From IMG/VR virus record IMGVR_UViG_3300005965_000002, positions 1 to 64,000 of that record: a DNA stretch of 64,000 nucleotides; one strand, given 5' to 3'. The stretch's first letter is position 1; each line of letters opens with the position of its first letter. The position numbers and the translations under genes were made by a program. Positions 2,925-64,000 of this stretch are shown here, one piece after another. The notes beneath the pieces are model-generated. The model was not told where the DNA came from and did no database searches. It saw only the letters and a list, made by a program, of their open reading frames with translations.

Positions 2925-3716
2925 CTTACTACTCCTAGTTTCCCAGGCCCTCTCGGTTGTAGTCTGGACTATATCTTCACCCTCAGTTTTACCTGTAGGG
3001 GCCTGACGTATAGTCTCTGAGGGGTCACTAAGACTTCCCTGCGGATTGCCGATTATTATCCATACAGATTTTTACTAATAATCTGCTAATAAGTTGGCAG
3101 ACTCATAGTACTGTAGGCTTTACGGGTTTCCCGCATATAGTCAGGTTTCACGCTCCCAATTACTTGAAAGGTGCTCAGGATATGAAGAACATTTCAAAAG
3201 AACTTCTTAAAAAATACTATCTACAGCAAAAACTTACACCCTATAAAATAGGAGAACTCTTTGGAGTTAACCACAAAACTGTAAGGAGCTACTTAAAAAA
3301 ATACCAAATACCCATGCGTACTGCCTCAGAATATAATTTTTTAGCCCGTAAGAGTCATACAAGACCCGACAAAAAAAAGTTACAAAGTAAATTATCCATT
3401 GCCGGGCATTCTGCTTTTCTTTGTGAAGGTTGGCATACAGAAAAAACAAATGCTTTTTATTTCTGTAATACAGATCCCGCCCTCATTCTTTTGGTCCTTA
3501 ATACGCTAAAAAGGATTTATCAAGTTAAAAGAATCGCTATACAAATAATAGCTAAAGAAAAAACAGGAACTAAAAAATTATTTGATATCTTTCCAGAAGC
3601 CTCCTTTATTGTTGAAAAAGATAGAAAAACTCCTATAGTTCGCCTTAGGTGTGGGGGTAAAAATCTTGCTAGAGAAGTAATAGAAAATTCTTACAGAATA
3701 GTTACTTCACTTTACT
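2925..3716 (-). ncRNA. group I intron (792 nt) in anticodon of tRNA-Leu(TAG)
   Basis: Inserted after U34, ends in G; core elements TCAGAGACTA and AAGATATAGTCC present. Confidence 0.9.
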
Positions 3717-4575: not shown

Positions 4576-4797
4576 AGCGGGGGGTGGGATTCGAACCCAC
4601 AGCGATTATCCCTAACCGGATTATTTTTCAGACGCTAGGGTTTCCGTTATTACGGTTCCTCATCATTGTTCGGGCTATAGCTAGCTCTGTTCAGGCCCGA
4701 ACCCAGGTAGAGGCGTGCAACCGGTCTCGCTTAACCCGGTCAGTTTGTTTTCTCCCGAACCTGGATGGGAGGCGTCTACCAATTCCGCCACCCCCGC
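4576..4797 (-). ncRNA. 222-nt tRNA-like RNA with ~140-nt structured insertion
   Basis: Acceptor GCGGGGG/CCCCCGC, Leu-type D arm, canonical T arm; several hairpins between anticodon-like arm and T arm. Confidence 0.75.
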
Positions 4798-5726: not shown

Positions 5727-5817
5727 TGGCGGAGGGTGAGGGACTCGAACCCCCAACACCCGAAGGTGACCGGTTTTCAAGACCGGAGCGGTCAACCAAA
5801 TTACGCTTTAACCCTCC
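5727..5817 (-). tRNA. tRNA-Ser(TGA)
   Basis: CCGGT-CTTGAAA-ACCGG, long variable arm, CCA. Confidence 0.92.
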
Positions 5818-12406: not shown

Positions 12407-13174
12407 CTTACTACTCTTGCTTTCACAAGCCGCTATAACGTTGTAGTCTGGACTATATCATCTCCTTAGTAAAACCTTAGGAGGGACGTGCATAGTCTCT
12501 GAACCTTCCCCATTTTAAAGGGGCTCGGCTGCTGATTACCCAATCTCTGATAGTTTTTTAACTTTCACACCCGCTGTTTTCAGCCATGTTGTAGTCATCT
12601 GAGCTATAAGGGCTTTCCAGCAATTCTCGTCCTGCTCACCTATTGATTTCTCAATAAGGGCTCTTTGATCCCTTATAAAAAAGTGAAGCCTGCCATGCTG
12701 CATCCTACTAATAATTATCATGTTACTTAAAGAGTTGTCTTTTATATCACCGTTAATATGATGAATAACTTCGTTATAAGAAAGTTTTCTCTTCAAAACT
12801 TGTTCAGCTATTACCCGGTGTATATCTTTAGAACTTCCTTTAAGTTTATTGTAATTACCAGTAGCATTGTTACCTATTTTTGAGACTTTTCTATAGCATT
12901 CTAAACAGTACTTTTGGTCTTTGTGGTTTAGCTTAATTTTTTTAGTGCATAAAACACAAAATCCCCAACCGTATCTATTTTTGTAAGCCGCTCCTCCTTT
13001 TTGAAGATAAAAATATTTACGTCTTTCTAGGTAACAAGGATTACAGTATCGTCTTCCTTTTGTTGGCGGGATCTTTTTACATTTAACACAAAGCCTCTCC
13101 ATAATAACTCCTTTTATTGGAAGGACCAATATTAGGAGATTATGGTGGACACAACGTGTCAAGTGTAAAAAACA
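12407..13174 (-). ncRNA. group I intron (768 nt) in anticodon of tRNA-Leu(TAA)
   Basis: After U34, ends ...AGTAGTAAG; TCAGAGACTA and GATATAGTCC core elements. Confidence 0.9.
12536..13102 (-). CDS. intron-encoded HNH homing endonuclease with zinc fingers
   Basis: HRVIAE..L.R.L...EVIHHING...DN...N motif; CxxC pairs; start at ATG 13102 with RBS GGAG. Confidence 0.85.
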   Translation of the reverse strand: MERLCVKCKKIPPTKGRRYCNPCYLERRKYFYLQKGGAAYKNRYGWGFCVLCTKKIKLNHKDQKYCLECYRKVSKIGNNATGNYNKLKGSSKDIHRVIAEQVLKRKLSYNEVIHHINGDIKDNSLSNMIIISRMQHGRLHFFIRDQRALIEKSIGEQDENCWKALIAQMTTTWLKTAGVKVKKLSEIG

Positions 13175-13268
13175 AAGTCCACAGTGTCTACCATTCCACC
13201 ACCCGAGCATGTCAAAGATCATCTCATATGAATATACTCCTTTGATTATTCTAATTAAAGTAAAAAAG

Positions 13269-13352
13269 TGCGGAGAAAGGGACTCGAACCCTTAATCTCA
13301 TTTAGAGAATTAGCTCCTCGGGCTAACGTGTATACCATTCCACCATCTCCGC
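13269..13352 (-). tRNA. tRNA-Leu(GAG), with C33
   Basis: TTAGC-CCGAGGA-GCTAA; no CCA. Confidence 0.88.
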
Positions 13353-16276: not shown

Positions 16277-17830
16277 TTACATTTTGTCCCTCCTTTTTTT
16301 CCATCTTTTCATAAGTTCTTTCTCCATATATTCTTTGGAAGGTTTCTTACCTTCTTTTTCAACGTATTCGTCCTCGATATCATTAACTATTCCAATAGCT
16401 ACTCCAACCTCAGGTCCAGCTTTTATATCGAGCAGTTCTTTTATCTCATTGCCGTTTAGGGGCGGCTTCTTCGATACAGGTACTTTTCTAGCTTGTTCTA
16501 TTTTTTCCCTTAGCATAGGAATTGAGTTACTAGGAGGTATTTTACCTAATTGATCTGCTTCAGCTAAATCGAGTAGAGAATCTACCAATTCGTCCCCAAT
16601 GCTTCTAATGAAACGACGTAATGCCTTTTCTGTAAGCTTTCCTTCTTCTAGATCTTTCGCCAAGGCATGGGGACGCATATGGTTTCTAACCATCTTTTTA
16701 ACCTTGTCGATATCTTTGACCTTAAAGTTCAGCCTCCTCATTATGCCCTCGGCTATTTCAGAGGCGGCAGCTTCATGGCCGTGGTGCTTTATTTCACCCT
16801 CCATCATAGATCTTGTTGCGGGCTTTCCAATGTCGTGCAGCAGAGCTGCCATCTGATTATTAAGACCAGGCTTTGCATTATCAAGCACCATAAGAGTGTG
16901 CGTCAATACATCACCTTCCTGGTGATGCCTCTCTGATTGCGTTTCCTCTTGTAGTGCTTTTACCTCGGGCAGTATGTGCTCAAGAAGACCGGTATCTCTC
17001 ATAAATTTAATCATAGAGGATAGTTTACCGTAATCAGCTATTTTTTCCATTTCCTCTTGGATACGCTCACTCGAAATGATATTAATTCGGTCTGCATTTC
17101 TTTTTACGGAGTCTATCATGTACTGTGGGATCTTCCAGTTGTATTTAGCTTTGAATCTCACAAGTCTGAGCATTCTCAATGGATCGCTCGTAAACATTTC
17201 ATCCAGGTTTACTTTCGGATGACCAGTAAGGTTTCCTTCTTCTATATCCTTCCGGCTACGCCCGGTAAGATCTTTTATCTCACCGGTAGATAAATCTTTT
17301 AAGAGCATGTTGACCGTAAAGTCACGCCTCATTATATCTTCCTCTACGGTGCCCGGCTCGGTTACTCTTTGCCTGGATTTAGGATCGGGAAAGGATTCCT
17401 TCTGGGAGTCAGCAAATTCTATTACTGCGCCCTGAGTCTGGTAGAGGTCACCTTTATAGTTAATGTTTTCCTTAAAGGTAATCTGCCATATCGGGTAAGA
17501 TTTTCCCATTTGATAAGGAGTCGATACAGATCCTGGATTCTCTTTGTTTAACGTAGTATTGATATATTTGGTCAGCTCTTCTGCGCCACCCCCCTTAGGG
17601 CTATCTACCATTATATCCAGGTCTTTGGCTTTTATTGAAGGATCTTTTTTTATTTTACTCAGATACTCATCGCGGACGTAACCGCCGACAGCATAAGCCT
17701 TACCTTTCCAAGGAGTGGTTGGTAGCCAATCTTTAAAAAGTCTTTCTACTTCTTTTTCTGCATCCGCAGCTACCTTTTTTAAAAGGTGGTTAGCTGCTTC
17801 TCTCAGTTTCGCTGCTGTCTTGAGTTCCAT
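16277..17830 (-). CDS. cca: CCA-adding tRNA nucleotidyltransferase with HD domain
   Basis: AVGGYVRD, DLD, RRDFTVN, DPLRMLR, SERI, LLHDIGKP motifs. Confidence 0.92.
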   Translation of the reverse strand: MELKTAAKLREAANHLLKKVAADAEKEVERLFKDWLPTTPWKGKAYAVGGYVRDEYLSKIKKDPSIKAKDLDIMVDSPKGGGAEELTKYINTTLNKENPGSVSTPYQMGKSYPIWQITFKENINYKGDLYQTQGAVIEFADSQKESFPDPKSRQRVTEPGTVEEDIMRRDFTVNMLLKDLSTGEIKDLTGRSRKDIEEGNLTGHPKVNLDEMFTSDPLRMLRLVRFKAKYNWKIPQYMIDSVKRNADRINIISSERIQEEMEKIADYGKLSSMIKFMRDTGLLEHILPEVKALQEETQSERHHQEGDVLTHTLMVLDNAKPGLNNQMAALLHDIGKPATRSMMEGEIKHHGHEAAASEIAEGIMRRLNFKVKDIDKVKKMVRNHMRPHALAKDLEEGKLTEKALRRFIRSIGDELVDSLLDLAEADQLGKIPPSNSIPMLREKIEQARKVPVSKKPPLNGNEIKELLDIKAGPEVGVAIGIVNDIEDEYVEKEGKKPSKEYMEKELMKRWKKRRDKM

Positions 17831-28539: not shown

Positions 28540-29563
28540 ATTTCCTCCTGCAACAATCGAGTTATAATGAATAGATAATTATAACGTAAGAATCTCTGTT
28601 TCACCAACGTCTTCAGGTAGTTCTTCGACTACCATCTTTGTGCTTTTATCCTTAGTGTTAAACCAGAAAAATATCTGATTATGATGGGTTGTAAAGGATT
28701 TTTCATCAAATTTGTCATTAGATGTGGTAGGGAATATCTCCTTATGTTCCTTTATAGCTCTTTCAATTAATCTTTTTCTTATGCTTTCCATGATTGTTTC
28801 CTTCTTTATTTTTTAACTGATTAAACAGTTTTTTTGTATTATTTATCATTGTTTTTAAGATATTAGGATCTTCTATATATTTTACGTTATCAGGGTTACT
28901 CTCGCTTACACAAATTAAATCAGATAGTATTGTGTCTGATATATCGTGAGACTCAACAATGTTGAAGAAAAAGTCGATCCCTTTTTCTGTAAATATTTTT
29001 TCCTTTAAATTAGCACAACACCGGGGCGTGCGGCTATTCTCATTATCTAAAAATTCCCTGGAGTTATCCAATAGAGTTGTGAATAAATCATACTCATAAA
29101 AATAGCTTTTTTGTCTCTGATATAACGTTTTAGTTCTTCATATGTAATTGATATTTTGTATGTTCTTTTAGACTGAATCTTCAAGGATCCATTATGCCTT
29201 GAAATATTAACCTTTGCTGGATCTGTTTTTTTATAGTTTTTTGACATCCATATAGGTTCATAATTATCGACTGAACGGTATCTATCTATATCTTCTTCTA
29301 CGTTATCGGAGTGGACATAGCCGGAGGAAGCCCACTCATCCAGATCATTATCATATATCGCTCTAGAAGCAACTTCCCAGGCTACTGAGTTACCACCTGT
29401 CTCCTTGCTTATAGTCTGATACAATACATAATACTTTTTCAGATCAAATTCTATGCCCATATGGTTTTCAACGGTATCGCCCACTTTATCTGTTTTAAGT
29501 ATAGCAATGAGCTCAACTTCTTTCAAGTCTTTAAAAGCTTCTAAGCATTTATCAATAAATACG

Positions 29564-30108
29564 TTATCTTGCATCATAGCTCCGTAAATCTGATTTTTTA
29601 GAGACACCCTCGTTTAGCTGGGTCTCCCAGAAATTTTGATAACACGCATTTAAGCCTGAGGTTTCCATAAGGGTGTTCAGAACAAACACATTTGGTAAGA
29701 CATTATTGTCTTTCCGAAAATTTTTTTCGTCCAACCCCAGAAATCTGTTAGCAAATAGGCCTACGGCTCCTGACCGGCTAATACCGGCATCGCAGTGGGC
29801 TACTAATGTATCTACCCGATCCTTGTTCCTATCAATAAACTCTATAATTCTAAGAGCGCATTCTTTCGAGAACAAAGTTATATCTTCATGCTTGGAAAGC
29901 CTGTTGTACTCCTCAAGGGTAACATCAGAAAATACACATTCCAGATAGTCTTTACAACCTTTTTTCTTCAGTTTATCTTTATCGACAATTGTCTCATCTT
30001 TTGTAGTGGTAATCGATATTAAAGACCAATTATCCCATATTTTTATGGAATCATCTAAAATCATGTCTTTAATAACCATTCTTGGTACTACTATTATTTT
30101 TTGAATCA
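29564..30108 (-). CDS. protein-tyrosine/dual-specificity phosphatase-like protein
   Basis: HCDAGISRS (CX5R) motif. Confidence 0.8.
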
Positions 30109-30807
30109 TACTATCTTCTTTATCGAATGATAGAGCATATGGAATCTTCCAGAATCCCATTCATCGTGCCAGTGTCCGCAATAATATTCAGCGTTTCTGC
30201 ACGTACGGAACACGTCATCTAGGTATAACCTTGTAGAATCCAGCTCCGTAAATCTGGAGCTTAGCCCTATAGTAGCAAAATACATGCGTATAAGAGTCTC
30301 CGGAGCGGTATGAGAGATTACGAAGTCTATTTGGTCTCCCATTTTTTCTAAAATCTTATAGCCTTTTTCTTTTTCCTCAGGTGACGGCACTTCCTGGGGC
30401 CACCAAGTTTTTCCCGGCTTACGCGAGTTCCGGTCGATGCTTTTTGCTCCACCCATAGTAAAAAAGAGTTTACCTTCGATATTATATACGTTACCTCTTT
30501 TTAGGTGAAAAACACTGTCAGAAGTCTTTCCAACAGAGCTGCCAAACATATCCACATCTTCGAACTCTTCAGCCAACCTTGCGTGATTCTCGTGGTTTCC
30601 GTCAACCCAGAGTGTTGTCCAGGGTTTATCATTCAACCACTTTAACCAGTATTCTTCAACGTTATCTTTTTTCGTCCATATCAGACCAAAATCCCCGGCG
30701 ATTATTAAATAATCTTTTTTAGTAAGCGTTTTCCCCTCAGGCCAATTTTTGGAAGAAAGATCGCCCATCCCTAATTCGCCGTGCTTATCTCCAGTAACAA
30801 AAATCAT
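30106..30807 (-). CDS. calcineurin-like metallophosphoesterase
   Basis: GDKHG, GDFG, GNHE, SHT, GHWH. Confidence 0.9.
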   Translation of the reverse strand: MIFVTGDKHGELGMGDLSSKNWPEGKTLTKKDYLIIAGDFGLIWTKKDNVEEYWLKWLNDKPWTTLWVDGNHENHARLAEEFEDVDMFGSSVGKTSDSVFHLKRGNVYNIEGKLFFTMGGAKSIDRNSRKPGKTWWPQEVPSPEEKEKGYKILEKMGDQIDFVISHTAPETLIRMYFATIGLSSRFTELDSTRLYLDDVFRTCRNAEYYCGHWHDEWDSGRFHMLYHSIKKIV

Positions 30808-30968
30808 TTTAATACTCTACTTTATCCGTCTCAAAGGATATACCAGTTTTTTTGACGATAACAGTTACCTGTATATGCTTTAAAGGGATTGGTAAAGGCG
30901 GTAAATAAATGTCTTTTCTATACGGATCATATCTTTTAATCGAAGGAACGAATGGTAACAGTTTTAAG

Positions 30969-31041
30969 CGCCCCCGAAAGGATTCGAACCTTTGACTGAC
31001 TGGTTTTAGGGACCACTCCTCTACCACTGAGGTACGGGGGC
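30969..31041 (-). tRNA. putative amber-suppressor tRNA (anticodon CTA), Trp-like anticodon arm
   Basis: TGGT-CCCTAAA-ACCA; perfect acceptor GCCCCCG/CGGGGGC; G73; C33. Confidence 0.7.
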
Positions 31042-31081
31042 TGATAGTCATTAATATACCTTTGTGATATATTTATTTTAA

Positions 31082-31393
31082 CTACTTTACGATATCAAGG
31101 CTTTTGAAGATACTTCCCAGATCGAAACAAGCTAGTGCTGTTTCTTGGTTGTCCAGGTCTGGCTCCCGAAAAACCGAAAAAATCTTCTCTTCTTTTTCTA
31201 GTTTTTCTTTCCAATACCTGAGGCCCCTCAAATGAGGGACCCCAAGATAAATGAGAGTGCCATTACCCCATGCCTTAAAAAGAGATTCATGTTCTAAGGC
31301 ATACTGTGAAAGCGCGTGGCCTCCTTGTACCAAACCGTAGACTTTGGAAAGATCAAGCCTCACTAGCACATACATCTTTGGCTGTGTAGGCAT
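31082..31393 (-). CDS. Pth2-like peptidyl-tRNA hydrolase
   Basis: KMYVLVRLDL....VQGGHA, FREPDLDNQETALA. Confidence 0.7.
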   Translation of the reverse strand: MPTQPKMYVLVRLDLSKVYGLVQGGHALSQYALEHESLFKAWGNGTLIYLGVPHLRGLRYWKEKLEKEEKIFSVFREPDLDNQETALACFDLGSIFKSLDIVK

Positions 31394-31661
31394 CTTTGAT
31401 CTCCTGAATAGTCTTCCAGTTAGGTTCGTTACCTTCTCTACAATGGTTCTCAATTTCTTCATATTTTCGTCCTCTAAGCAGGCAGTAGGCAATATGACTG
31501 TGGCGGTAGTCAGCCTTTAGAGAAAGAACCTCTGCTTGTTCTCTCCAAGCATTCCCGGTTCCTGACTCCCTTTGGATTGATCTAATCTTGTTTTTGAGTT
31601 CACGTAGACCTAAAGCCTTCTTCTTCAGCGTATTTTTCAGAATTGAATATGAGGTATGCAT
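31353..31661 (-). CDS. hypothetical protein upstream of the Pth2-like gene
   Basis: RHSHIAYCLLRGRKYEEIE; RBS lies inside a hairpin. Confidence 0.7.
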   Translation of the reverse strand: MHTSYSILKNTLKKKALGLRELKNKIRSIQRESGTGNAWREQAEVLSLKADYRHSHIAYCLLRGRKYEEIENHCREGNEPNWKTIQEIKDAYTAKDVCASEA

Positions 31662-31965
31662 TCCGCACTCCTTTAATTAAGTGAATAGTTAATAGATAGC
31701 ACTTAAAAAAGGAATGCTTTAAGGAGGCTTAAAAACTCGGAGGACCTATGTGAATCCGGAAACCTACACAGGTGAGAAAAAGTGGGTCATTTTATTTTCC
31801 TATTAAGATTTAATATTTAAATACCGATAATTTCATCATCGTAAAAATAGGTATCTTTTTCGTGACCACTCTTCATTTTATAGATGAAATAAGTAGCTAC
31901 TAATGCAAGAATACCCGATATAGCGATAATTTTTTTCATACTATGACTCTCAGATTAAAAGATTA

Positions 31966-32793
31966 TTAGATACCCAAGTAATGATGCCCATATTGCTGGA
32001 AGTTATATACTGGGTTTTCTACAATAATTCTTTTGTATTTTTCAATGTAAGCTAAAAACTTTTTTGATTCCTGCGCCCATGATTTTAGGGAATTGCAGGT
32101 AGGGACTGTTCTTACTTTAAGCTTATGCAATAAATCATGTTCCCATTTAAAATGATGAACAAAATTTTTGGAGAAACAGCTATCTACTTCCGGAAAATAT
32201 GTTTCTGTTCGGTAGCCGTTTACTTTTTCTCCGTTCTCCCGCAACAAAACATGATGACCTCCTCCGATGTCTCTCGATGCCTTCGCGGCCATTACCTTTT
32301 TATCCCAGGCACCTAACAGGTAGTGTGTAATAAACCCACCCAGTGAGAATATTTCTTCTAAAGAATATTCTTCTTTAAATAAAGGTAAGTCACCGCTGGA
32401 ATAGACTCTATCTAGTAACCTACCCTCGATTGAATCTAAGAAATGCTCTGAACAATAATTGATTTGATCACGTAAAGGAGGATCAAAGTAATGAAATTCA
32501 TCGCTATCCGCGTAAATCACCCAGTCCTGGTCGTCACAGACCTCATTTTTGGCTTTATTTTCGATCTCTATCTTTTTGTCCTCACTAAAATGTCCGTGCC
32601 AGGATCCATTTCCTTTTACATTATACCGGTTACAGACCTTACTAATACCCTGCAGTATATCGTATGAAAAATCTGGATAAGGCTGGTGGTTAGTAACTAT
32701 AAATTGATCGACACCAAGTCTCTGATAATAGCCAAAGAAACGATCCAGATACTTAATATCAGGACCTATCGTTGTGACTAAATAAATCTTCAT
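31966..32793 (-). CDS. glycosyltransferase family 2-like protein
   Basis: YYQRLGVD, WVIYADSDEF, GGGHH, HHFKW. Confidence 0.75.
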   Translation of the reverse strand: MKIYLVTTIGPDIKYLDRFFGYYQRLGVDQFIVTNHQPYPDFSYDILQGISKVCNRYNVKGNGSWHGHFSEDKKIEIENKAKNEVCDDQDWVIYADSDEFHYFDPPLRDQINYCSEHFLDSIEGRLLDRVYSSGDLPLFKEEYSLEEIFSLGGFITHYLLGAWDKKVMAAKASRDIGGGHHVLLRENGEKVNGYRTETYFPEVDSCFSKNFVHHFKWEHDLLHKLKVRTVPTCNSLKSWAQESKKFLAYIEKYKRIIVENPVYNFQQYGHHYLGI

Positions 32794-33690
32794 TTTTTAA
32801 CTTTTGGGATAAGGTAAATTTCAGAAGTATCGTAAGATCCATCATCATTCTTGTTTAAGCGCCCATGATAGATTGGAATGTGTGGGCCTATCTTCCTGGC
32901 GGTATCCCGCGCCTCATTCAATGCTGTGTAGGGGCCTTCATATTTTTTGCCTTTTTCTACTTCTACGAAAAATCCTTGCATTTGTCCTCACTTGTTATAC
33001 CATACCCAACCTACGAAAATTACCTGGTCACCGTTATCAAGATTTACCAAAAATCTTTTTAATTCGTTATCACCATCACAGGGAAGAGTGCAGGTAGTAT
33101 AGCCATGGCCTAAAGAAGCTCTTTCAATATGAGAGAGTACTCGTATACCATTTAGCACAAACGATGCATCAAACTTGTATTCAAACATAGCAGAATCAAA
33201 GTTTGGCTTTCTGTACTGATCTACATCGTTTTTTACGATAATAGCAGTAGGTATCATCCAGAAGTATCTGTTGCCTATGATATAGGGGCACTCATAAATT
33301 ACTTTATCTCTGATCTTTGATAGATCAACATTAAGTCGTTCCGCTTCATGCCAGGGGTCTGGTCTGATTAAAGATATTAAACCTATTTTTTCAGATTTAA
33401 TAGATTCTAATTTATCGAAGTCATAGGTGTGGGAAACATACTCTGACCCATACAAAATATCTCCGTAATCTTCACCCTGAAAAGTCTTAGCGACTACTGG
33501 CTTAATCATGATTCCTCCGTACTTATTTCGTCTATTTCCTTTTGTATTTCCTTTTGTATTTCTTTCTTAGCTTTTTGTCTTTCGGTCTTCTTATTAAGAC
33601 TATCTAACTCTGCCTCCCACCAATTGATGTATCCTTTGGGAGGATGGTTATCTTCGTAGTTATGACTTTTTGGTTTACGCCCGTAAGGTT

Positions 33691-35844: not shown

Positions 35845-36852
35845 TTAACCCTTAGTGCTTTCTGAACAGAAACTAACTAATACTCTTTTGTTTTTTACTA
35901 TGATTCTGAAATACGGGCATTTTCCATTTATCGACAAATCTTTTCCATCATTACCTTTTCTAAATTTAACAATCTCAAATTGGTCAGGATTGAATTTGTG
36001 TAGGAACGTTATGGGGACACCCATATATCCATTATAATCGATTGGTATATCCTGTGTTTTATTGACATTTATCCCATCATAATTATCATACTTTGGATAT
36101 TCAGCTTCATTACCAAGATATTTCCTTTTTAGTTCAATGTCTTCATGACGTTTAAAAGTGTCCAAATTAGTTAGCCATAGACAATTATTTGGCGAAACTA
36201 TTCTATTTCCAGCATCATCTATGCGTGCTTCTGTTCCATAGAGATCATAGTGGTCAGGTACAATAAAACCAGAAACGCCTCTACCAAGACCTATTCCTAG
36301 CCAAGCATTGTTTTCCTTAATTAACTTAAAAATTTCCTTATACGTTATGGCATTAACATTCCCAATTATCAAAAATTGTTTATCATAGTTTACCAATTGA
36401 GCGACATACTCTCTGAATAGCGAAAAAGGAGGATTAGTAACAATAATATCTGATTGTTTCAAGAGTTCAATGCTTTCAGCACTTCTAAAGTCTCCATCTC
36501 CTTTGAAATAAACTATATCCGTTGTATCTGGTATCTTTTTCTCGCCCTCAGTTCCTGTATATGCATAGAAAAAACCATTTTCATCTTCTTGCGTATTAAA
36601 TAAATCTCTTGTTTGTTCCTTATAACATGACGCGATTACTTTTTTAAGGCCAAGTTCCTCAAAGTTTGAAGTAAAATAACGGAAGAAGTTGCTGATACGA
36701 GGGTCATCACAATTACAATAAACAACTTTATTCTTAAAATGACTCTTATAATGTTGTAATTCACTTTCTATATCCGCAAGCTGGGTGTAAAATTCATCAC
36801 TTTTCGATTTTTTTGCCTTTTGAAGTAATTTATTTGTTGCATTTCGTGCCAT
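35845..36852 (-). CDS. EcoRI-family adenine DNA methyltransferase
   Basis: AKKSKSDEFYT, VYCNCDDP, GDGDFRS.E, VTNPPFSLFREY, GVPITF. Confidence 0.9.
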   Translation of the reverse strand: MARNATNKLLQKAKKSKSDEFYTQLADIESELQHYKSHFKNKVVYCNCDDPRISNFFRYFTSNFEELGLKKVIASCYKEQTRDLFNTQEDENGFFYAYTGTEGEKKIPDTTDIVYFKGDGDFRSAESIELLKQSDIIVTNPPFSLFREYVAQLVNYDKQFLIIGNVNAITYKEIFKLIKENNAWLGIGLGRGVSGFIVPDHYDLYGTEARIDDAGNRIVSPNNCLWLTNLDTFKRHEDIELKRKYLGNEAEYPKYDNYDGINVNKTQDIPIDYNGYMGVPITFLHKFNPDQFEIVKFRKGNDGKDLSINGKCPYFRIIVKNKRVLVSFCSESTKG

Positions 36853-36861
36853 TAATTCACC

Positions 36862-37488
36862 TTAGTTGTTATTTGTTAATTGATTGAATATGTCGCTTCC
36901 CAATACTTTGAGCGAGGTCTTCGAAATTTCAATCATAACATCAAACATATCCTTAGTATCCCACCTTTCTCCGTTCCCCTGTGTATAAATAGATGTTGCT
37001 TGAAGCATAATTGTTTTATCAATATGCTTAACAAACTTATTCATACATAAATTGGTGTTGATGGGCATACCATAATTTGCTGATGTCAACCTATCTAGTC
37101 TATTTAGCATTCCTGAGTTATATTCAAGAGTTACAACTCTTCCGTCTGGCCTTTGAATTGAAATAGTTTCTGTTAAGAAATTTGAGCCTTCCAAAAACAG
37201 TACGTAAGGGAAATGAGATTCAGCTAGCATAAAGTTAGCTATTTCTGATATGTTTTTATGAGACCTTTCAATCGCATTTCCAGCGGCCATCAAGTCTTGG
37301 TTATTACCAGTGCCAACTAATTGACCATTTCTAATGTTTTCAATGTCTTTTCCCTGATGTTTGGCTTCTGAAACCAAAACTACTCTCCAATTGCCGTTGT
37401 CGTCTTTTACTTCAATAATTCCGCCATCAGGTTTAATACTAGAATTACCTAAATCTTTTCTCATTACTATGACTTGTTTGTAATTCAT
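36862..37488 (-). CDS. N-truncated EcoRI-like restriction endonuclease fused to a Pth2-like N-terminus
   Basis: KPDGG..EAKHQG..MAAGNAIERSHKN closely match EcoRI; first 14 aa MNYKQVIVMRKDLG are Pth2-like. Confidence 0.85.
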   Translation of the reverse strand: MNYKQVIVMRKDLGNSSIKPDGGIIEVKDDNGNWRVVLVSEAKHQGKDIENIRNGQLVGTGNNQDLMAAGNAIERSHKNISEIANFMLAESHFPYVLFLEGSNFLTETISIQRPDGRVVTLEYNSGMLNRLDRLTSANYGMPINTNLCMNKFVKHIDKTIMLQATSIYTQGNGERWDTKDMFDVMIEISKTSLKVLGSDIFNQLTNNN

Positions 37489-55482: not shown

Positions 55483-55496
55483 AATTACTCCTTTAA

Positions 55497-55568
55497 AGCC
55501 GGTGAAGGGACTCGGACCCCCAACCTACGCATTACGGGTGCGTTGCTCTACCGTTGAGCTACACCGGC
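55497..55568 (-). tRNA. tRNA-Thr(CGT), with C33
   Basis: ACGCA-CCCGTAA-TGCGT; no CCA. Confidence 0.85.
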
Positions 55569-56269
55569 TAGTATCCTAATTCAGATGCTGCTTGAACAAT
55601 TGGATCTGGCATCTTGATCTGCGTATAGGATGTCTTATTTTTATATACCTGGAGTTTCTCTATTTTCTCCCCCACAAAATCAGAGATTCTTTTTAATTCG
55701 TGATCCTGGTTTTCTATAAAATCTTCCATTTTTACCACTATCGATCTTTCTGGGTAAGGAACAGATTTTATAATGTCGTATTGAAGCTTCCAGCTCCATA
55801 AGCTTATATTTGCGTTTTTTAATCCACCAAACGCTCCAAAATGATTTAACAGCTTATCGCTATAGTGAGGGGCATTTCTCATTGGATTGCGAAACCAGAG
55901 TACATAGTAAAACTCAGGATATAGCCTAGTAAGCCAGGGATAGATAAAAGTTGTTTCTGGAAGCTTCCACCCTTTTTTTGGAGATTTATCGAGTAGAATG
56001 TCATGCAGATACCGGCGAATATCCTCGGCATCTTTAGCAGTGCAGCCTTCTATTGCTGGTTGTAGATTATAGTGATTGCCATCAAATTTAATTTGACTGA
56101 TAAACCTTTTGGCAATATCATACATTAAAGCATAGGGTTCCTTATCATAGCTTACATTCCTAAACTGAGGGGAACCCATAAAAAATCCGCTACTAGAAAA
56201 AGTTTTTGCTATTAATCTAGAAGCAGAAGATCCACGACCAATGATTGTTACAATCTTAGGACTCATCAC
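55568..56269 (-). CDS. sulfotransferase-family protein
   Basis: IIGRGSSASR, GWKLPET, FRNP, VKMEDF. Confidence 0.7.
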   Translation of the reverse strand: MMSPKIVTIIGRGSSASRLIAKTFSSSGFFMGSPQFRNVSYDKEPYALMYDIAKRFISQIKFDGNHYNLQPAIEGCTAKDAEDIRRYLHDILLDKSPKKGWKLPETTFIYPWLTRLYPEFYYVLWFRNPMRNAPHYSDKLLNHFGAFGGLKNANISLWSWKLQYDIIKSVPYPERSIVVKMEDFIENQDHELKRISDFVGEKIEKLQVYKNKTSYTQIKMPDPIVQAASELGY

Positions 56270-61975: not shown

Positions 61976-64000
61976 TTAACCTTGCCATTTTTGAACTATA
62001 GGTATCCTTCGACCGATACCGAAAGCTTTTTCGTGTATCTTTAAGGTTATAGGTGCCTGATTTCTTTTAAATTCGTTTCTTCTAACCATACGACCAATCT
62101 GGTGGTAGTCGCTTGCACTCATTTGATTTTGTACCCGCAGTATCTCTGCCCAGTCTTCCCTATATGCTTCTCTTCCTTCAATAAATACCTTTAGTCTCGC
62201 ATCTAGAAGAGGATAAGGGGGCAAATTATCAGTATCCTCCTGTCCGGGAGCTAGCTCAGCGGAAGGAGCCTTATTAATGATAGACTCCGGTATTAATTCT
62301 TTATTATGAAATTCATTATAGTACCTGGCAAGCTCATAGACTTCCATCTTATAAAGATCACTTAAAGGGGCCAGGCCCCCATTCATGTCCCCGTATATTG
62401 TGCAATTATGCGTTTTTACGCCATTTACTGTGTATTCATGGTCTTTTTCTACTGTGAAATCGAACATTTCAACTTCTGTTTCCACAGTTTCTAATTTTTT
62501 AATAGCGGCGTAGTATGTCTTACTCTTAATTCTATCTTCCAAAGCAACCGTGATATCACTTTTATTTTTAATTGTATCAAGAAATTTTTTAAGAATACTT
62601 CTTCCAATCCACTTACTATTTTTATTTAAGTGCCTTCGAATAGTCCCATTTACCTTCCAATGTGTGTTGTCCTTGATGTGTGATAATTCACAGTGTGTTA
62701 TAGGAACAACATCATAGCTGGTTTTTATTTTTTTTGTGTTTTTTGTGTTATTATATAGTCTATTAGCTATACTTTTCTTCAGGATTTTAAAATTTAACAA
62801 TTTTTCTGATTCTATTGCCGGTATATACACTTCGTGTAAGTTTTTCCTGGACCTAATATAGGAAACTACCCCCAAATTCAACAAAATTAGATGTAACTTT
62901 TCTACTAATTTATAGCTAACACTATGGTATAGGATTTCTGACGTATTTTTGTTACCGTTGCTAGTACTATCTAAAAAAACACCTTCAATGAAAGGTTTTA
63001 CAAGATTTAGCGGGGCTCTCATAATGCACGCCGGTACATCTTTATTATGGGAACCATGTTCAATTCCTAAATGTCTTAAAAAACTGTTAAACTGAACACT
63101 ACATATTTCTATAAAAAAGCAACCTCTTTGGTCTTTTTTTGTAACTTTATACGAGCTTTCTTTTAGCCTTATGCTCTTAAAAAACATTACACAGAAATCA
63201 GAAACATACTTTTTAGAAGTACGTATTCTATAGATACTATCATTTATCCCGGAATAAGAGCCGTCAGCAACACAGATACCTATAAATTTAGATAGATTTT
63301 CATTCAAGTGAGATGGAAAATTAATATCTTGGGATATATAGTCAAATTCTTTTTTTTTGTAAGAAAACGTTATGTCGGTACTTCTGCCCCATATGTTTTC
63401 ACCAAAACTTACTATAGACATGTCTCCTACTTTTAGATTTTTAGCCTCTATAAATTCTTCTTTTCCATTTTTGTGTATCTTTATTTTGTGGTCTTCCGAT
63501 ATCTTTATTATATCCCCAAGTATGTTAGTAATTTTGATAAATCTATTTTTAACATTCCTAAATGAGTGCGTAACAGGCATGTCCTTGATAGAATAGGAAT
63601 TTTTTTCGTCAAAAACGCTACGAGCGCTAATTATGCCATTATCCGTAAATATGTAACTATCTCCATGGACACAATAACCCACGGACATCTCACTTTTGTT
63701 TCCTGTGGAAACTAGTAGATACCCAAATTGGTTAGAAAAAGCCATCAAAAGGAGCCCTCTTATACGGGCTTGCATGTTTTGCCTAGTCAAATCTGCGTCT
63801 GGAAGGTCGCCGACAGCGAAAAGAAAATCAGTGAAAACTTTTTCAAATATCCCTTTGATAGGTAGATTCTTTAGCTCTACTCCCAAGTTACTGCATAGCT
63901 TCTCAGAGTCCGTCACACTTCCTATACTAGAATACTCTGATGGCATTGTTACCGCAAAAACTTTGTCCGGACCAATAGCATCAGCGGCCATAGCTATTGC
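61976..64000 (-). CDS. nadE: NAD+ synthetase (5' end outside window) containing an intein
   Basis: MPS.YS, NMQARIRG, TGNKSE..VGY|CTIYGD, DLYK, KAPSAEL..GQ.D, EFKR.QAP. Confidence 0.92.
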   Translation of the reverse strand, partial: AIAMAADAIGPDKVFAVTMPSEYSSIGSVTDSEKLCSNLGVELKNLPIKGIFEKVFTDFLFAVGDLPDADLTRQNMQARIRGLLLMAFSNQFGYLLVSTGNKSEMSVGYCVHGDSYIFTDNGIISARSVFDEKNSYSIKDMPVTHSFRNVKNRFIKITNILGDIIKISEDHKIKIHKNGKEEFIEAKNLKVGDMSIVSFGENIWGRSTDITFSYKKKEFDYISQDINFPSHLNENLSKFIGICVADGSYSGINDSIYRIRTSKKYVSDFCVMFFKSIRLKESSYKVTKKDQRGCFFIEICSVQFNSFLRHLGIEHGSHNKDVPACIMRAPLNLVKPFIEGVFLDSTSNGNKNTSEILYHSVSYKLVEKLHLILLNLGVVSYIRSRKNLHEVYIPAIESEKLLNFKILKKSIANRLYNNTKNTKKIKTSYDVVPITHCELSHIKDNTHWKVNGTIRRHLNKNSKWIGRSILKKFLDTIKNKSDITVALEDRIKSKTYYAAIKKLETVETEVEMFDFTVEKDHEYTVNGVKTHNCTIYGDMNGGLAPLSDLYKMEVYELARYYNEFHNKELIPESIINKAPSAELAPGQEDTDNLPPYPLLDARLKVFIEGREAYREDWAEILRVQNQMSASDYHQIGRMVRRNEFKRNQAPITLKIHEKAFGIGRRIPIVQKWQG
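62405..63673 (-). mobile_element. 423-aa intein with LAGLIDADG endonuclease in NadE
   Basis: Starts CVHGDS, ends FDFTV..DHEY.VNG..THN followed by Cys; IGICVADG and FIEGVFLDS blocks. Confidence 0.93.

What the first reader, a model, noticed from the sequence alone, without database searches (positions are those of the whole stretch)
30969..31041. Putative amber suppressor tRNA in a genome that still uses TAG as stop
The 7-nt loop CCCTAAA centres on CTA, and the arm and G73 resemble tRNA-Trp. C33 is unusual, but Leu-GAG and Thr-CGT here also have it. TAG ends many ORFs (e.g. 942, 3803, 5817), so this is not full recoding; conditional read-through is possible.
Basis: partly seen in the sequence, partly recalled or inferred. 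Interest (0 to 1): 0.6.

Follow-up and report, generated by a model that had tools for sequence, protein, structure and literature searches.

The report
Conserved amber suppressor tRNA in megaphage
A genuine, evolutionarily conserved tRNA gene whose anticodon reads the UAG stop codon sits in the 37-tRNA array of a giant bacteriophage that nevertheless uses UAG as an ordinary stop. This habit is already known in tRNA-rich giant phages, and its purpose is still unexplained.

Summary
Window 30969-31041 (- strand) is a well-formed tRNA gene (Rfam 57.6 bits) with anticodon CUA, C33 in place of the usual U33, G73 and no encoded CCA.

The window is the first 64 kb of a 258.6-kb contig of a giant phage from a hypersaline lake, estimated about 55% complete. 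The contig uses the standard code. Coding density is 92% and does not rise if TAG is read as sense. TAG ends about 18% of crude gene calls. Portal, sheath, baseplate and fibre genes are intact.

The tRNA is not decaying. Orthologues sit at the same place in the array in relatives whose proteins are only 44-75% identical, including a 98%-complete 467-kb genome that is also standard-code with 25% TAG stops. The anticodon is invariant, and 13 of 20 stem pairs show compensatory changes.

The lineage also keeps an unpaired 27:43, giving a 4-bp anticodon stem. The literature links this feature to stronger stop read-through.

The Trp resemblance is limited to the anticodon arm. Which amino acid is inserted is unknown, and no phage aaRS or release factor was found in this contig.

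Suppressor tRNAs in standard-code jumbo phages are already recorded (for example RsoM2USA) and were found in 6 of 12 further large phage records here. Verdict: real, a known kind, moderately interesting.

The parts
30969..31041 (-). tRNA gene with anticodon CUA (amber-suppressor type). It has C33, a G27.G43 mismatch (4-bp anticodon stem), G73 and no encoded CCA.
   Evidence: ARAGORN. Rfam 57.6 bits. Orthologues and compensatory changes.
31053..31081 (-). Sigma-70-like promoter candidate TTAAAA-17 nt-TATATT. Its -10 element ends 11 bases before tRNA position 1. It belongs to a recurrent motif GTATATTA on the coding strand.
   Evidence: Promoter scan. The motif occurs 14 times against 4.2 expected, 11 of them on the - strand, mostly with TTKAAW 17-18 nt upstream. 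The -10 is kept in L064 and L053. Inferred, not shown.
31082..31393 (-). 103-codon ORF with a peptidyl-tRNA hydrolase 2 (PTH2) fold, directly upstream of the tRNA. In this phage it ends in TAG (31082-31084).
   Evidence: AlphaFold2 pLDDT 94.5. The top Foldseek PDB hits (E<=0.001) are all but one Pth2/Bit1-family entries, TM 0.71-0.82. Weak profile hit to 2zv3, E=0.045. No Pfam hit. The adjacency to the CUA tRNA is kept in L053, L055 and G005.
16277..17830 (-). Phage CCA-adding enzyme (tRNA nucleotidyltransferase with HD domain). The suppressor would need such an enzyme because it has no encoded CCA.
   Evidence: PHROG tRNA nucleotidyltransferase 1.7e-54; Pfam PolyA_pol, PolyA_pol_RNAbd and HD. 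The link to this tRNA is inferred.
13268..13352 (-). tRNA-Leu(GAG), the second tRNA of the array with C33 (loop CCGAGGA).
55496..55569 (-). tRNA-Thr(CGU), the third tRNA with C33 (loop CCCGUAA). Its T loop is UCCGAGU.

Best explanation
This is a functional, phage-encoded UAG-reading (amber suppressor) tRNA. It is an old, vertically inherited member of the large tRNA array of a clade of roughly 470-kb phages that use the standard genetic code.

Inferred mechanism:
- It is transcribed from its own sigma-70-like promoter.
- It is trimmed by host RNase P and 3' nucleases.
- It receives CCA from the phage's CCA-adding enzyme.
- It is charged by a host aminoacyl-tRNA synthetase that leans on U35. 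By E. coli precedent for CUA suppressors (recalled, not tested here), that is Gln or Lys rather than Trp.
- It competes with host RF1 at UAG codons.

The conserved unpaired 27:43 (4-bp anticodon stem) and the A36-A37-A38 arm look like tuning for stop-codon decoding. C33, present only in this sub-lineage, may weaken or otherwise modify it.

The phage keeps many TAG stops, so the outcome would be partial read-through of UAG on phage and host messages, not a changed code.

The selective benefit is not established. The leading candidates are control of a few programmed UAG sites, or interference with host termination.
For: Shown:
- A canonical cloverleaf at 57.6 bits.
- A CUA tRNA at the same place in the array (Pro(UGG)-CUA-Phe-Asp in the direction of transcription) in near-identical strains (L048-L052), in a ~92% nucleotide relative (L064), in L053/L054, L055/L056 and L057/L058, and in the 98%-complete 466,729-bp genome G005.
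- L064 has 1 change in the 73 nt of the tRNA. The same relative's contig in run X4 shows 131 changes over the 1,547 bases that include the tRNA.
- RNAalifold gives a cloverleaf in which 13 of 20 pairs have compensatory double changes. The anticodon and A37-A38 are invariant.
- The own and G005 CUA tRNAs are each other's best cross-genome match among CUA tRNAs, and the own one's top match in G005 is the CUA tRNA.
- 27:43 is G.G, A.G, A.G and A.A in four divergent lineages. In G005 this is the only such mismatch among 49 tRNAs.
- Published work reports that unpairing 27-43 raises UAG read-through by a CUA tRNA (PMC13092985).

Standard code:
- This contig.
- The whole of G005: coding 0.921 against 0.925 with TAG as sense; TAG ends 135 of 550 genes.

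Other support:
- No RF, GlnRS/GluRS, TrpRS/TyrRS or LysRS-class gene in the 258 kb, so charging must be by the host.
- Promoter candidate.
- CCA-adding enzyme.
- Precedent: standard-code jumbo phage RsoM2USA carries a CUA tRNA (PMC8504454). A standard-code relative of recoded phages has acquired a suppressor tRNA (a TGA suppressor; bioRxiv 10.1101/2021.08.26.457843).
Against: - There is no expression, maturation, charging or suppression data. No RNA run holds this phage.
- C33 replaces the near-universal U33, and 27:43 is unpaired. Either could mean low activity.
- TAG stops show no sign of adapting to a suppressor. They are not depleted (18% here, 25% in G005). They are not followed more closely by back-up stops (38% within 5 codons, against 46% for TAA and 55% for TGA). 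They are not conserved between orthologues (1 of 15).
- No in-frame TAG or conserved read-through extension was found in this contig, so no beneficiary gene is known here.
- The inserted amino acid cannot be told from sequence. The discriminator varies (G or A), and no paralogue is clearly closest.
Confidence: 0.7

Rival explanations
1. Dedicated decoder of a few programmed UAG sites. The tRNA exists to read specific in-frame UAG codons, for example the one in a phage RF1-like release-factor gene. This would form a feedback loop that sets how efficiently UAG terminates during infection.
For: - G005 carries the orthologous CUA tRNA. It also encodes a compact RF1-like protein (PCRF plus RF-1 domains, GGHRWQRIPPTE, GGQ) inside the tRNA array, with an in-frame TAG at codon 38.
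- Its closest homologues (L129-L132) have TGA at the same codon.
- More distant homologues have a prfB-like CTT-TGA-C or CTT-TAG +1 frameshift cassette at the same site. The site is therefore a conserved recoding site, not a recent nonsense mutation.
Against: - This phage has no RF homologue in its 258 kb. The two tRNA-Glu genes that flank the RF gene in G005 are adjacent here.
- Across 11 further RF1-like-bearing records, a CUA tRNA is present in 2 of the 5 TAG-type contigs examined (3 of 5 lineages once G005 is added and the near-identical G009/G010 are counted once) and in 3 of 6 with TGA at the site. There is no association.
- In G005 an ATG directly follows the TAG, so termination and re-initiation is an alternative.
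Confidence: 0.12
2. Weapon or counter-measure aimed at the host rather than at phage genes. Global read-through of host UAG-terminated genes would disturb the host proteome or blunt a host defence. Alternatively, the tRNA is an altered-loop, nuclease-resistant member of a replacement tRNA set.
For: - The phage carries a near-complete replacement tRNA set (37 genes), a CCA-adding enzyme and a PTH2-fold protein.
- Phage tRNAs with anticodon-loop changes are reported to evade host anticodon nucleases (PMC10264068; PMC11555353).
- C33 occurs in three tRNAs of this phage only.
- Phage TAG stops look indifferent to the suppressor.
Against: - A CUA tRNA replaces no host sense-codon reader, so the nuclease-evasion logic does not apply to it directly.
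- The host is unknown, and no defence or target gene was identified.
- This is pure inference.
Confidence: 0.1
3. First step towards, or remnant of, a TAG-recoded (code 15) genome, with the recoded block lying in the missing 45% of the genome.
For: - Recoding in phages is often confined to late genes, and incomplete contigs can miss it (bioRxiv 10.1101/2021.08.26.457843).
- The contig is estimated 55% complete.
Against: - Portal, sheath, baseplate and fibre genes are in the contig and intact.
- The 98%-complete relative G005 has the same tRNA, is standard-code throughout, and has 25% TAG stops, including in its structural block.
- TAG is not depleted, contrary to the proposed pre-recoding state.
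Confidence: 0.04
4. Non-functional or neutral leftover: a duplicated tRNA whose anticodon drifted to CUA, disabled by C33 and the 27:43 mismatch.
For: C33, the G27.G43 mismatch and the lack of any visible target gene in this contig.
Against: - The anticodon is invariant.
- 13 of 20 pairs show compensatory changes.
- The position in the array is conserved across relatives whose median protein identity is 44%.
- There is 1 change in 73 nt, against about 8% divergence in the flanks.
- Relatives have U33.
- The 27:43 mismatch is itself conserved.
Confidence: 0.04

Closest known systems
CUA suppressor tRNA of standard-code jumbo phages (e.g. Ralstonia phage RsoM2USA, 343.8 kb, 44 tRNAs; PMC8504454)
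   Same: A single CUA tRNA inside a near-complete phage tRNA set, in a genome where UAG is abundant as a stop. The function is unexplained.
   Different: This phage belongs to a different lineage. Its portal is nearest to an uncultured 485-kb phage, Tunturiibacter phage Tunturi_5 and Bacillus phage G. Here conservation across a clade, a 4-bp anticodon stem and C33 are documented. The RsoM2USA tRNA itself was not compared.
Suppressor tRNA(CUA) of TAG-recoded (code 15) phages: crAss-like, Lak and others (bioRxiv 10.1101/2021.08.26.457843; PMC9523058)
   Same: A phage-encoded CUA tRNA with the loop CUCUAAA. It is proposed to compete with host RF1.
   Different: Those genomes carry many in-frame TAGs in late genes and are depleted in TAG stops. 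This one has none, and 18% of its genes end in TAG. Eleven CUA tRNAs fetched by the arm pattern all have a paired C27-G43, whereas this lineage has 27:43 unpaired.
tRNAs with a 4-bp ('unpinned' 27-43) anticodon stem that promote stop read-through: Blastocrithidia-type tRNA-Trp(CCA), E. coli tRNA-Thr2(CUA) with G27.A43, and su7 27-43 mutants (PMC13092985 and the references it cites)
   Same: The top pair of the anticodon stem is unpaired. In this lineage it is a conserved purine-purine mismatch on a stop-reading tRNA.
   Different: Those cases are near-cognate tRNA-Trp or laboratory constructs. Here the feature sits on a natural, fully cognate CUA tRNA of a phage. Its effect was not measured.
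tRNA-Pyl (ARAGORN's label for any CUA tRNA)
   Same: Anticodon CUA.
   Different: This tRNA has an ordinary cloverleaf, with G18-G19, T-loop UUCGAAU, two bases between the acceptor and D stems, and a 5-6 nt variable loop. tRNA-Pyl has a compact D loop, a 3-nt variable loop and a 6-bp anticodon stem (features recalled from the literature).

Membership tests
Canonical elongator tRNA (Rfam RF00005) | Cloverleaf with 7-bp acceptor, D arm with G18-G19, 7-nt anticodon loop, T arm with UUCGAAU | tested here: met
   Full-length model match 1-71, 57.6 bits. Parse.
Canonical elongator tRNA (Rfam RF00005) | U33 (U-turn nucleotide) | tested here: not met
   C33 in this phage, L064 and L053. U33 in the orthologues of L055, L057 and G005.
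Canonical elongator tRNA (Rfam RF00005) | Five standard pairs in the anticodon stem | tested here: not met
   27:43 is G.G. It is A.G, A.G and A.A in orthologues and G.U in L057.
Amber suppressor tRNA | Anticodon CUA in a functional, selected tRNA body | tested here: met
   The anticodon is invariant in six distinct orthologues. 13 of 20 pairs show compensatory changes.
Amber suppressor tRNA | Inserts an amino acid at UAG in vivo | not testable with these tools
   No RNA or protein data. No RNA run holds the phage.
tRNA-Trp-derived suppressor (su7-like) | Bacterial Trp acceptor features: A1-U72 and G73 | tested here: not met
   G1-C72 in all orthologues. N73 is G in three and A in three. The phage's own tRNA-Trp has A1-U72 and G73.
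tRNA-Trp-derived suppressor (su7-like) | Overall sequence nearest to tRNA-Trp | tested here: inconclusive
   The arm is 14/17 identical to the phage's own Trp. Overall, Arg(ACG) 57/73 exceeds Trp 53/73. Among cultured phages, Trp matches 81% of the core and Thr 75% of the full length.
TAG-recoded (code 15) phage system | In-frame TAG in conserved genes, and a gain in coding density when TAG is sense | tested here: not met
   Coding density 0.925 against 0.924. No in-frame TAG inside conserved alignments. TAG junctions do not split domains. The same holds for the complete relative G005.
TAG-recoded (code 15) phage system | Accessory factors (phage RF2 or aaRS), present in some members | tested here: not met
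   No PCRF, tRNA-synt_1c, tRNA-synt_1b or tRNA-synt_2 match in the 258 kb. G005 has an RF1-like gene, not an RF2-like one.
tRNA-Pyl | Atypical compact structure (short D loop without G18-G19, 3-nt variable loop, long anticodon stem) | tested here: not met
   Standard D and T loops and a 5-6 nt variable loop. The defining features are recalled from the literature.

The most novel reading that the evidence does not exclude
This clade of standard-code megaphages maintains a deliberately 'unpinned' (4-bp anticodon stem) amber suppressor as one arm of a phage-run control of UAG termination. The suppressor is opposed by a phage RF1-like factor whose own gene carries the sensor stop codon: an in-frame UAG at the conserved recoding site in G005. 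Read-through of UAG on host and phage messages would then be set by the phage during infection, without any change of code.
Probability: 0.1. Interest if true: 0.75.

Novelty: new member of a known kind. Interest (0 to 1): 0.4.

Why it matters
Suppressor tRNAs in phages are usually read as the machinery of stop-codon recoding, or as its first evolutionary step.

Here an amber-suppressor-type tRNA is kept under purifying selection across a deep clade of giant phages. These phages are fully standard-code and keep 18-25% TAG stops, so it is neither a transitional state nor part of a recoded block.

That sharpens an open question: what does a virus gain from partial UAG read-through?

It also supplies natural variants for testing how tRNA structure tunes stop-codon decoding. 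These are C33 against U33, and a conserved unpaired 27:43.

In passing, the work exposed a family of compact phage RF1-like genes with prfB-like recoding sites. They may be the other half of the same control.

Tried and rejected
1. Recoding. ORF statistics with TAG, TGA or TAA taken out of the stop set gave no gain for TAG. Rejected.

2. Programmed read-through at the five TAG junctions with long in-frame ORFs on both sides (15346, 42063, 50083, 92938, 246118).
   - The flanking ORFs hit unrelated or complete domains.
   - Each downstream ORF has its own ATG and a Shine-Dalgarno-like sequence.
   - The PolA junction is out of frame in G005.
   Rejected.

3. Back-up stops after TAG, the +4 base, and conservation of TAG stops.
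   - There is no protective pattern.
   - TAG followed by G is enriched. This is probably overlap with the next gene's Shine-Dalgarno sequence, not termination tuning.

4. Identity by paralogy within this phage and within G005. No clear parent tRNA emerged.

5. Exact-pattern scans of IMG/VR.
   - The D arm found nothing.
   - The anticodon arm found only unrelated CUA tRNAs.
   - The CCA-enzyme relatives G001 and G002 carry no tRNAs in their fragments.

6. Megablast of 29000-33000 against cultured phages: no match.

7. Expression. No RNA run is available.

8. Association between the stop type at the RF1-like recoding site and possession of a CUA tRNA: none, 3 of 5 against 3 of 6.

9. Pfam on the ORF upstream of the tRNA gave nothing. 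Only the fold search identified the PTH2 fold. The catalytic Lys of the Pth2 'GKGK' motif (recalled from the literature) is not conserved, so activity is uncertain.

10. A search of G003 and G004 with the portal protein was uninformative.

No alternative genetic code was named in any translation tool.

Full report
WHAT IS THERE

The window is the first 64 kb of a 258,580-bp IMG/VR virus record, which CheckV estimates to be 55% complete. Its DNA is held by hypersaline-lake metagenomes.

- All 37 tRNA genes of the contig lie in the window, all on the - strand, spread among small ORFs.
- The window also holds a CCA-adding enzyme, a type IA topoisomerase, PRPP synthase and an intein-bearing NAD synthase.
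- The rest of the contig carries portal, tail sheath, baseplate wedge and collagen-like fibre genes, a RecD2-like helicase and PolA.
- By portal protein, the nearest records are an uncultured 485-kb phage, Tunturiibacter phage Tunturi_5 and Bacillus phage G.

THE tRNA

At 30969-31041(-), ARAGORN and Rfam agree on a full-length tRNA at 57.6 bits.

- The loop is CCCUAAA, so the anticodon is CUA with C33, A37 and A38.
- The discriminator is G. CCA is not encoded.
- The first pair of the anticodon stem, 27:43, is G.G.
- C33 also occurs in Leu(GAG) and Thr(CGU), and in no other well-formed tRNA of the array.

THE GENETIC CODE

With the three standard stops, a crude non-overlapping ORF set covers 92.5% of the contig. 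Removing TAG from the stop set gives 92.4%.

- TAG ends 45 of 247 calls.
- TAG junctions with long frames on both sides are no commoner than for TAA or TGA.
- The five TAG junctions that exist separate unrelated or complete domains. Each downstream ORF has its own ATG and ribosome-binding site.
- tblastn of each genome's proteins against the other (103 reciprocal best hits, median identity 44%) found no TAG inside a conserved alignment.

The genome is standard-code, late genes included.

CONSERVATION

Contigs were fetched through the neighbouring metallophosphoesterase gene. They show the same CUA tRNA in the following places:

- near-identical strains;
- a ~92% nucleotide relative (L064), with 1 change in 73 nt, while the same relative's contig in run X4 shows 131 changes over the 1,547 bases that include the tRNA;
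- L053/L054, where the neighbouring protein is 71% identical;
- L055/L056 (52% identical) and L057/L058 (53% identical).

The sheath protein led to G005. It is a 466,729-bp record, 98% complete, with 49% GC against 39% here. It has 49 tRNAs in the same order and a CUA tRNA in the same slot, between Pro and Phe-Asp in the direction of transcription.

RNAalifold on five orthologues gives a cloverleaf in which 13 of 20 pairs carry compensatory double changes. My explicit parse of six orthologues confirms this. It also shows:

- an invariant C34-U35-A36-A37-A38;
- G1-C72 and C2-G71 throughout;
- a variable discriminator (G three times, A three times);
- C33 only in the sub-lineage of this phage.

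G005 is also standard-code over its whole length: coding 0.921 against 0.925 with TAG as sense. TAG ends 135 of 550 calls, including in the structural block.

So the suppressor-type tRNA and abundant TAG stops have coexisted stably. This is not the TAG-depleted pre-recoding state proposed for relatives of recoded phages.

A CONSERVED PECULIARITY

The 27:43 pair is a purine-purine mismatch in four divergent lineages: G.G, A.G, A.G and A.A. It is G.U in a fifth. In G005 the CUA tRNA is the only one of 49 with such a mismatch.

A 2026 study summarises the evidence that unpairing 27-43 (a 4-bp anticodon stem) promotes stop-codon read-through (PMC13092985). It reports three cases:

- near-cognate tRNA-Trp;
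- E. coli tRNA-Thr2 given a CUA anticodon, where the natural G27.A43 mismatch outperformed the repaired stem;
- CUA derivatives of tRNA-Trp, which then also read UAA.

Eleven CUA tRNAs fetched by the arm pattern all have a paired C27-G43. Two further phage CUA tRNAs, in G007 and L160, are unpaired. I read the mismatch as tuning of decoding. This is inference.

WHICH AMINO ACID

This is undetermined.

- The Trp likeness is confined to the anticodon arm (14/17). The identical arm sits on many unrelated phage CUA tRNA bodies, which points to convergence on an arm suited to U-starting codons.
- The acceptor stem is not Trp-like.
- No aaRS or release factor is encoded in the contig.
- By E. coli precedent (recalled, not tested here), CUA tRNAs without strong acceptor identity are charged mainly by GlnRS or LysRS through U35.

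SURROUNDINGS

- A sigma-70-like TTAAAA-17-TATATT lies just upstream of the tRNA; its -10 element ends 11 bases before tRNA position 1. It belongs to a motif that is over-represented on the coding strand, 14 occurrences against 4.2 expected.
- Directly upstream is a 103-codon ORF with a confident PTH2 (peptidyl-tRNA hydrolase 2) fold. Its adjacency to the CUA tRNA is kept in L053, L055 and G005. The whole array is syntenic, however, so the adjacency alone proves no functional link.

WHAT IT IS FOR

In this contig I found no beneficiary.

- There is no in-frame TAG and no conserved extension.
- TAG stops are not conserved between orthologues (1 of 15).
- TAG stops are not backed up by nearby stops.

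One lead came from G005. Inside its tRNA array it encodes a compact RF1-like protein (GGHRWQRIPPTE, GGQ, no domain 1) with an in-frame TAG at codon 38.

- Its closest homologues have TGA at the same codon.
- Among 44 homologous loci, 22 have a prfB-like GGAGG...CTT-TGA-C +1 frameshift cassette at that site, and 5 have CTT-TAG there.
- It is therefore a conserved recoding site. In G005 the CUA tRNA is the obvious decoder.

Two points weigh against this as the general purpose of the tRNA.

- This phage has no RF homologue in its 258 kb.
- Across 11 further RF1-like-bearing records, possession of a CUA tRNA does not track whether the site uses TAG or TGA: 3 of 5 against 3 of 6.

The same survey showed CUA tRNAs in 6 of 12 further tRNA-rich phage records. 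In five of the six, coding density changes little when TAG is read as sense; in G017 it rises from 0.764 to 0.830 (0.868 with TGA as sense), so its code is less certain. The feature is therefore common in this kind of phage.

COMPARISON AND VERDICT

A CUA tRNA in a standard-code jumbo phage is on record for RsoM2USA. Suppressor tRNAs in standard-code relatives of recoded phages are noted by Borges et al.. This is a new member of that known kind.

What is added here:

- proof of long-term purifying selection across a clade that is demonstrably standard-code;
- the conserved 4-bp anticodon stem;
- the lineage-specific C33;
- a possible link to phage RF1-like genes that carry recoding sites.

Function in vivo remains unshown.

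Noticed in passing
G005 (IMGVR_UViG_3300037067_027616) 209383-210063(-) = L128:1090-1770(-); homologues L129-L173: A family of compact phage RF1-like release factors (GGHRWQRIPPTE, GGQ, no domain 1) with a conserved recoding site near codon 38. Of the homologous loci, 22 have a prfB-like GGAGG..CTT-TGA-C +1 frameshift cassette and 5 have CTT-TAG. The G005 subclade has an in-frame stop in frame 0 (TGA in L129-L132, TAG in G005). One locus (L157) has no stop.
   Followed up: partly
window 4583-4796 (-): A tRNA-like gene (acceptor GCGGGGG/CCCCCGC, normal D arm, T arm GTGGGTTCGAATCCCAC) interrupted by about 150 nt where the anticodon arm should be. It has a GTATATTA promoter motif 12 nt upstream and a T-run after it. 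Neither ARAGORN nor Rfam calls it.
   Followed up: no
window 2944-3239 (-) and 12433-12677 (-): Two group I introns (Rfam 79 and 67 bits). The first is followed by what looks like the 3' half of a long-variable-arm tRNA (…GGGGGTTCAAGTC). It is probably an intron-split tRNA-Leu, which would fill a gap in the array.
   Followed up: no
window 5727-5817 (-): ARAGORN's 91-nt 'tRNA-Ala(cgc)' is a mis-parse. The sequence closely resembles tRNA-Ser(GCU) of the array and has the arm CCGGU CUUGAAA ACCGG, so it is a Ser(UGA)-type tRNA. Rfam scores it at only 31 bits.
   Followed up: partly
window 13268-13352 and 55496-55569 (-): C33 also occurs in tRNA-Leu(GAG) and tRNA-Thr(CGU). The G005 Thr(CGU) has U33, so C33 is specific to this sub-lineage. 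Thr(CGU) also has the unusual T loop UCCGAGU. Evasion of an anticodon nuclease is one possible reason. This was not tested.
   Followed up: partly
window 30808-31050 (-): Gene callers on other assemblies of this phage call an 80-codon ORF that starts 9 nt before the tRNA and reads through the whole tRNA gene. Only its C-terminal ~45 codons are conserved: L053 has a separate 51-codon ORF there with its own ATG. In this phage the conserved part has no canonical start codon of its own.
   Followed up: partly
window, 11 sites on the - strand (e.g. 24275, 41282, 48608, 59755): A recurrent promoter-like element, TTKAAW-17/18 nt-(R)GTATATTA, in intergenic DNA on the coding strand. The GTATATTA core occurs 14 times against 4.2 expected.
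   Followed up: partly
window 61976-63991 (-); contig 89102-92920 (-); contig 246121-250020 (+): Inteins with LAGLIDADG or homing-endonuclease domains interrupt NAD synthase, the RecD2-like helicase (two Hint regions) and DNA polymerase A. Together with the group I introns, they show a heavy load of mobile elements.
   Followed up: no
window 35845-37488 (-): An EcoRI-like restriction-modification pair: EcoRI methylase (Pfam 1.9e-132) next to a gene carrying a precomputed EcoRI endonuclease domain.
   Followed up: no
G005 195861-195937 (-) = L113:15861-15937: The G005 orthologue of the suppressor has D loop AGCGUGUA and T loop UUAAAAU. This looks like a U19-A56 replacement of the usual G19-C56 tertiary pair.
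   Followed up: no
G005 and this contig, all TAG stops: TAG stops are followed by G far more often than TAA or TGA stops. In G005 the figures are 43 of 113 against 17-19% (chi-square p=1e-4), and this contig shows the same trend. The likely cause is that TAG overlaps the next gene's Shine-Dalgarno sequence (TAGGAG).
   Followed up: partly
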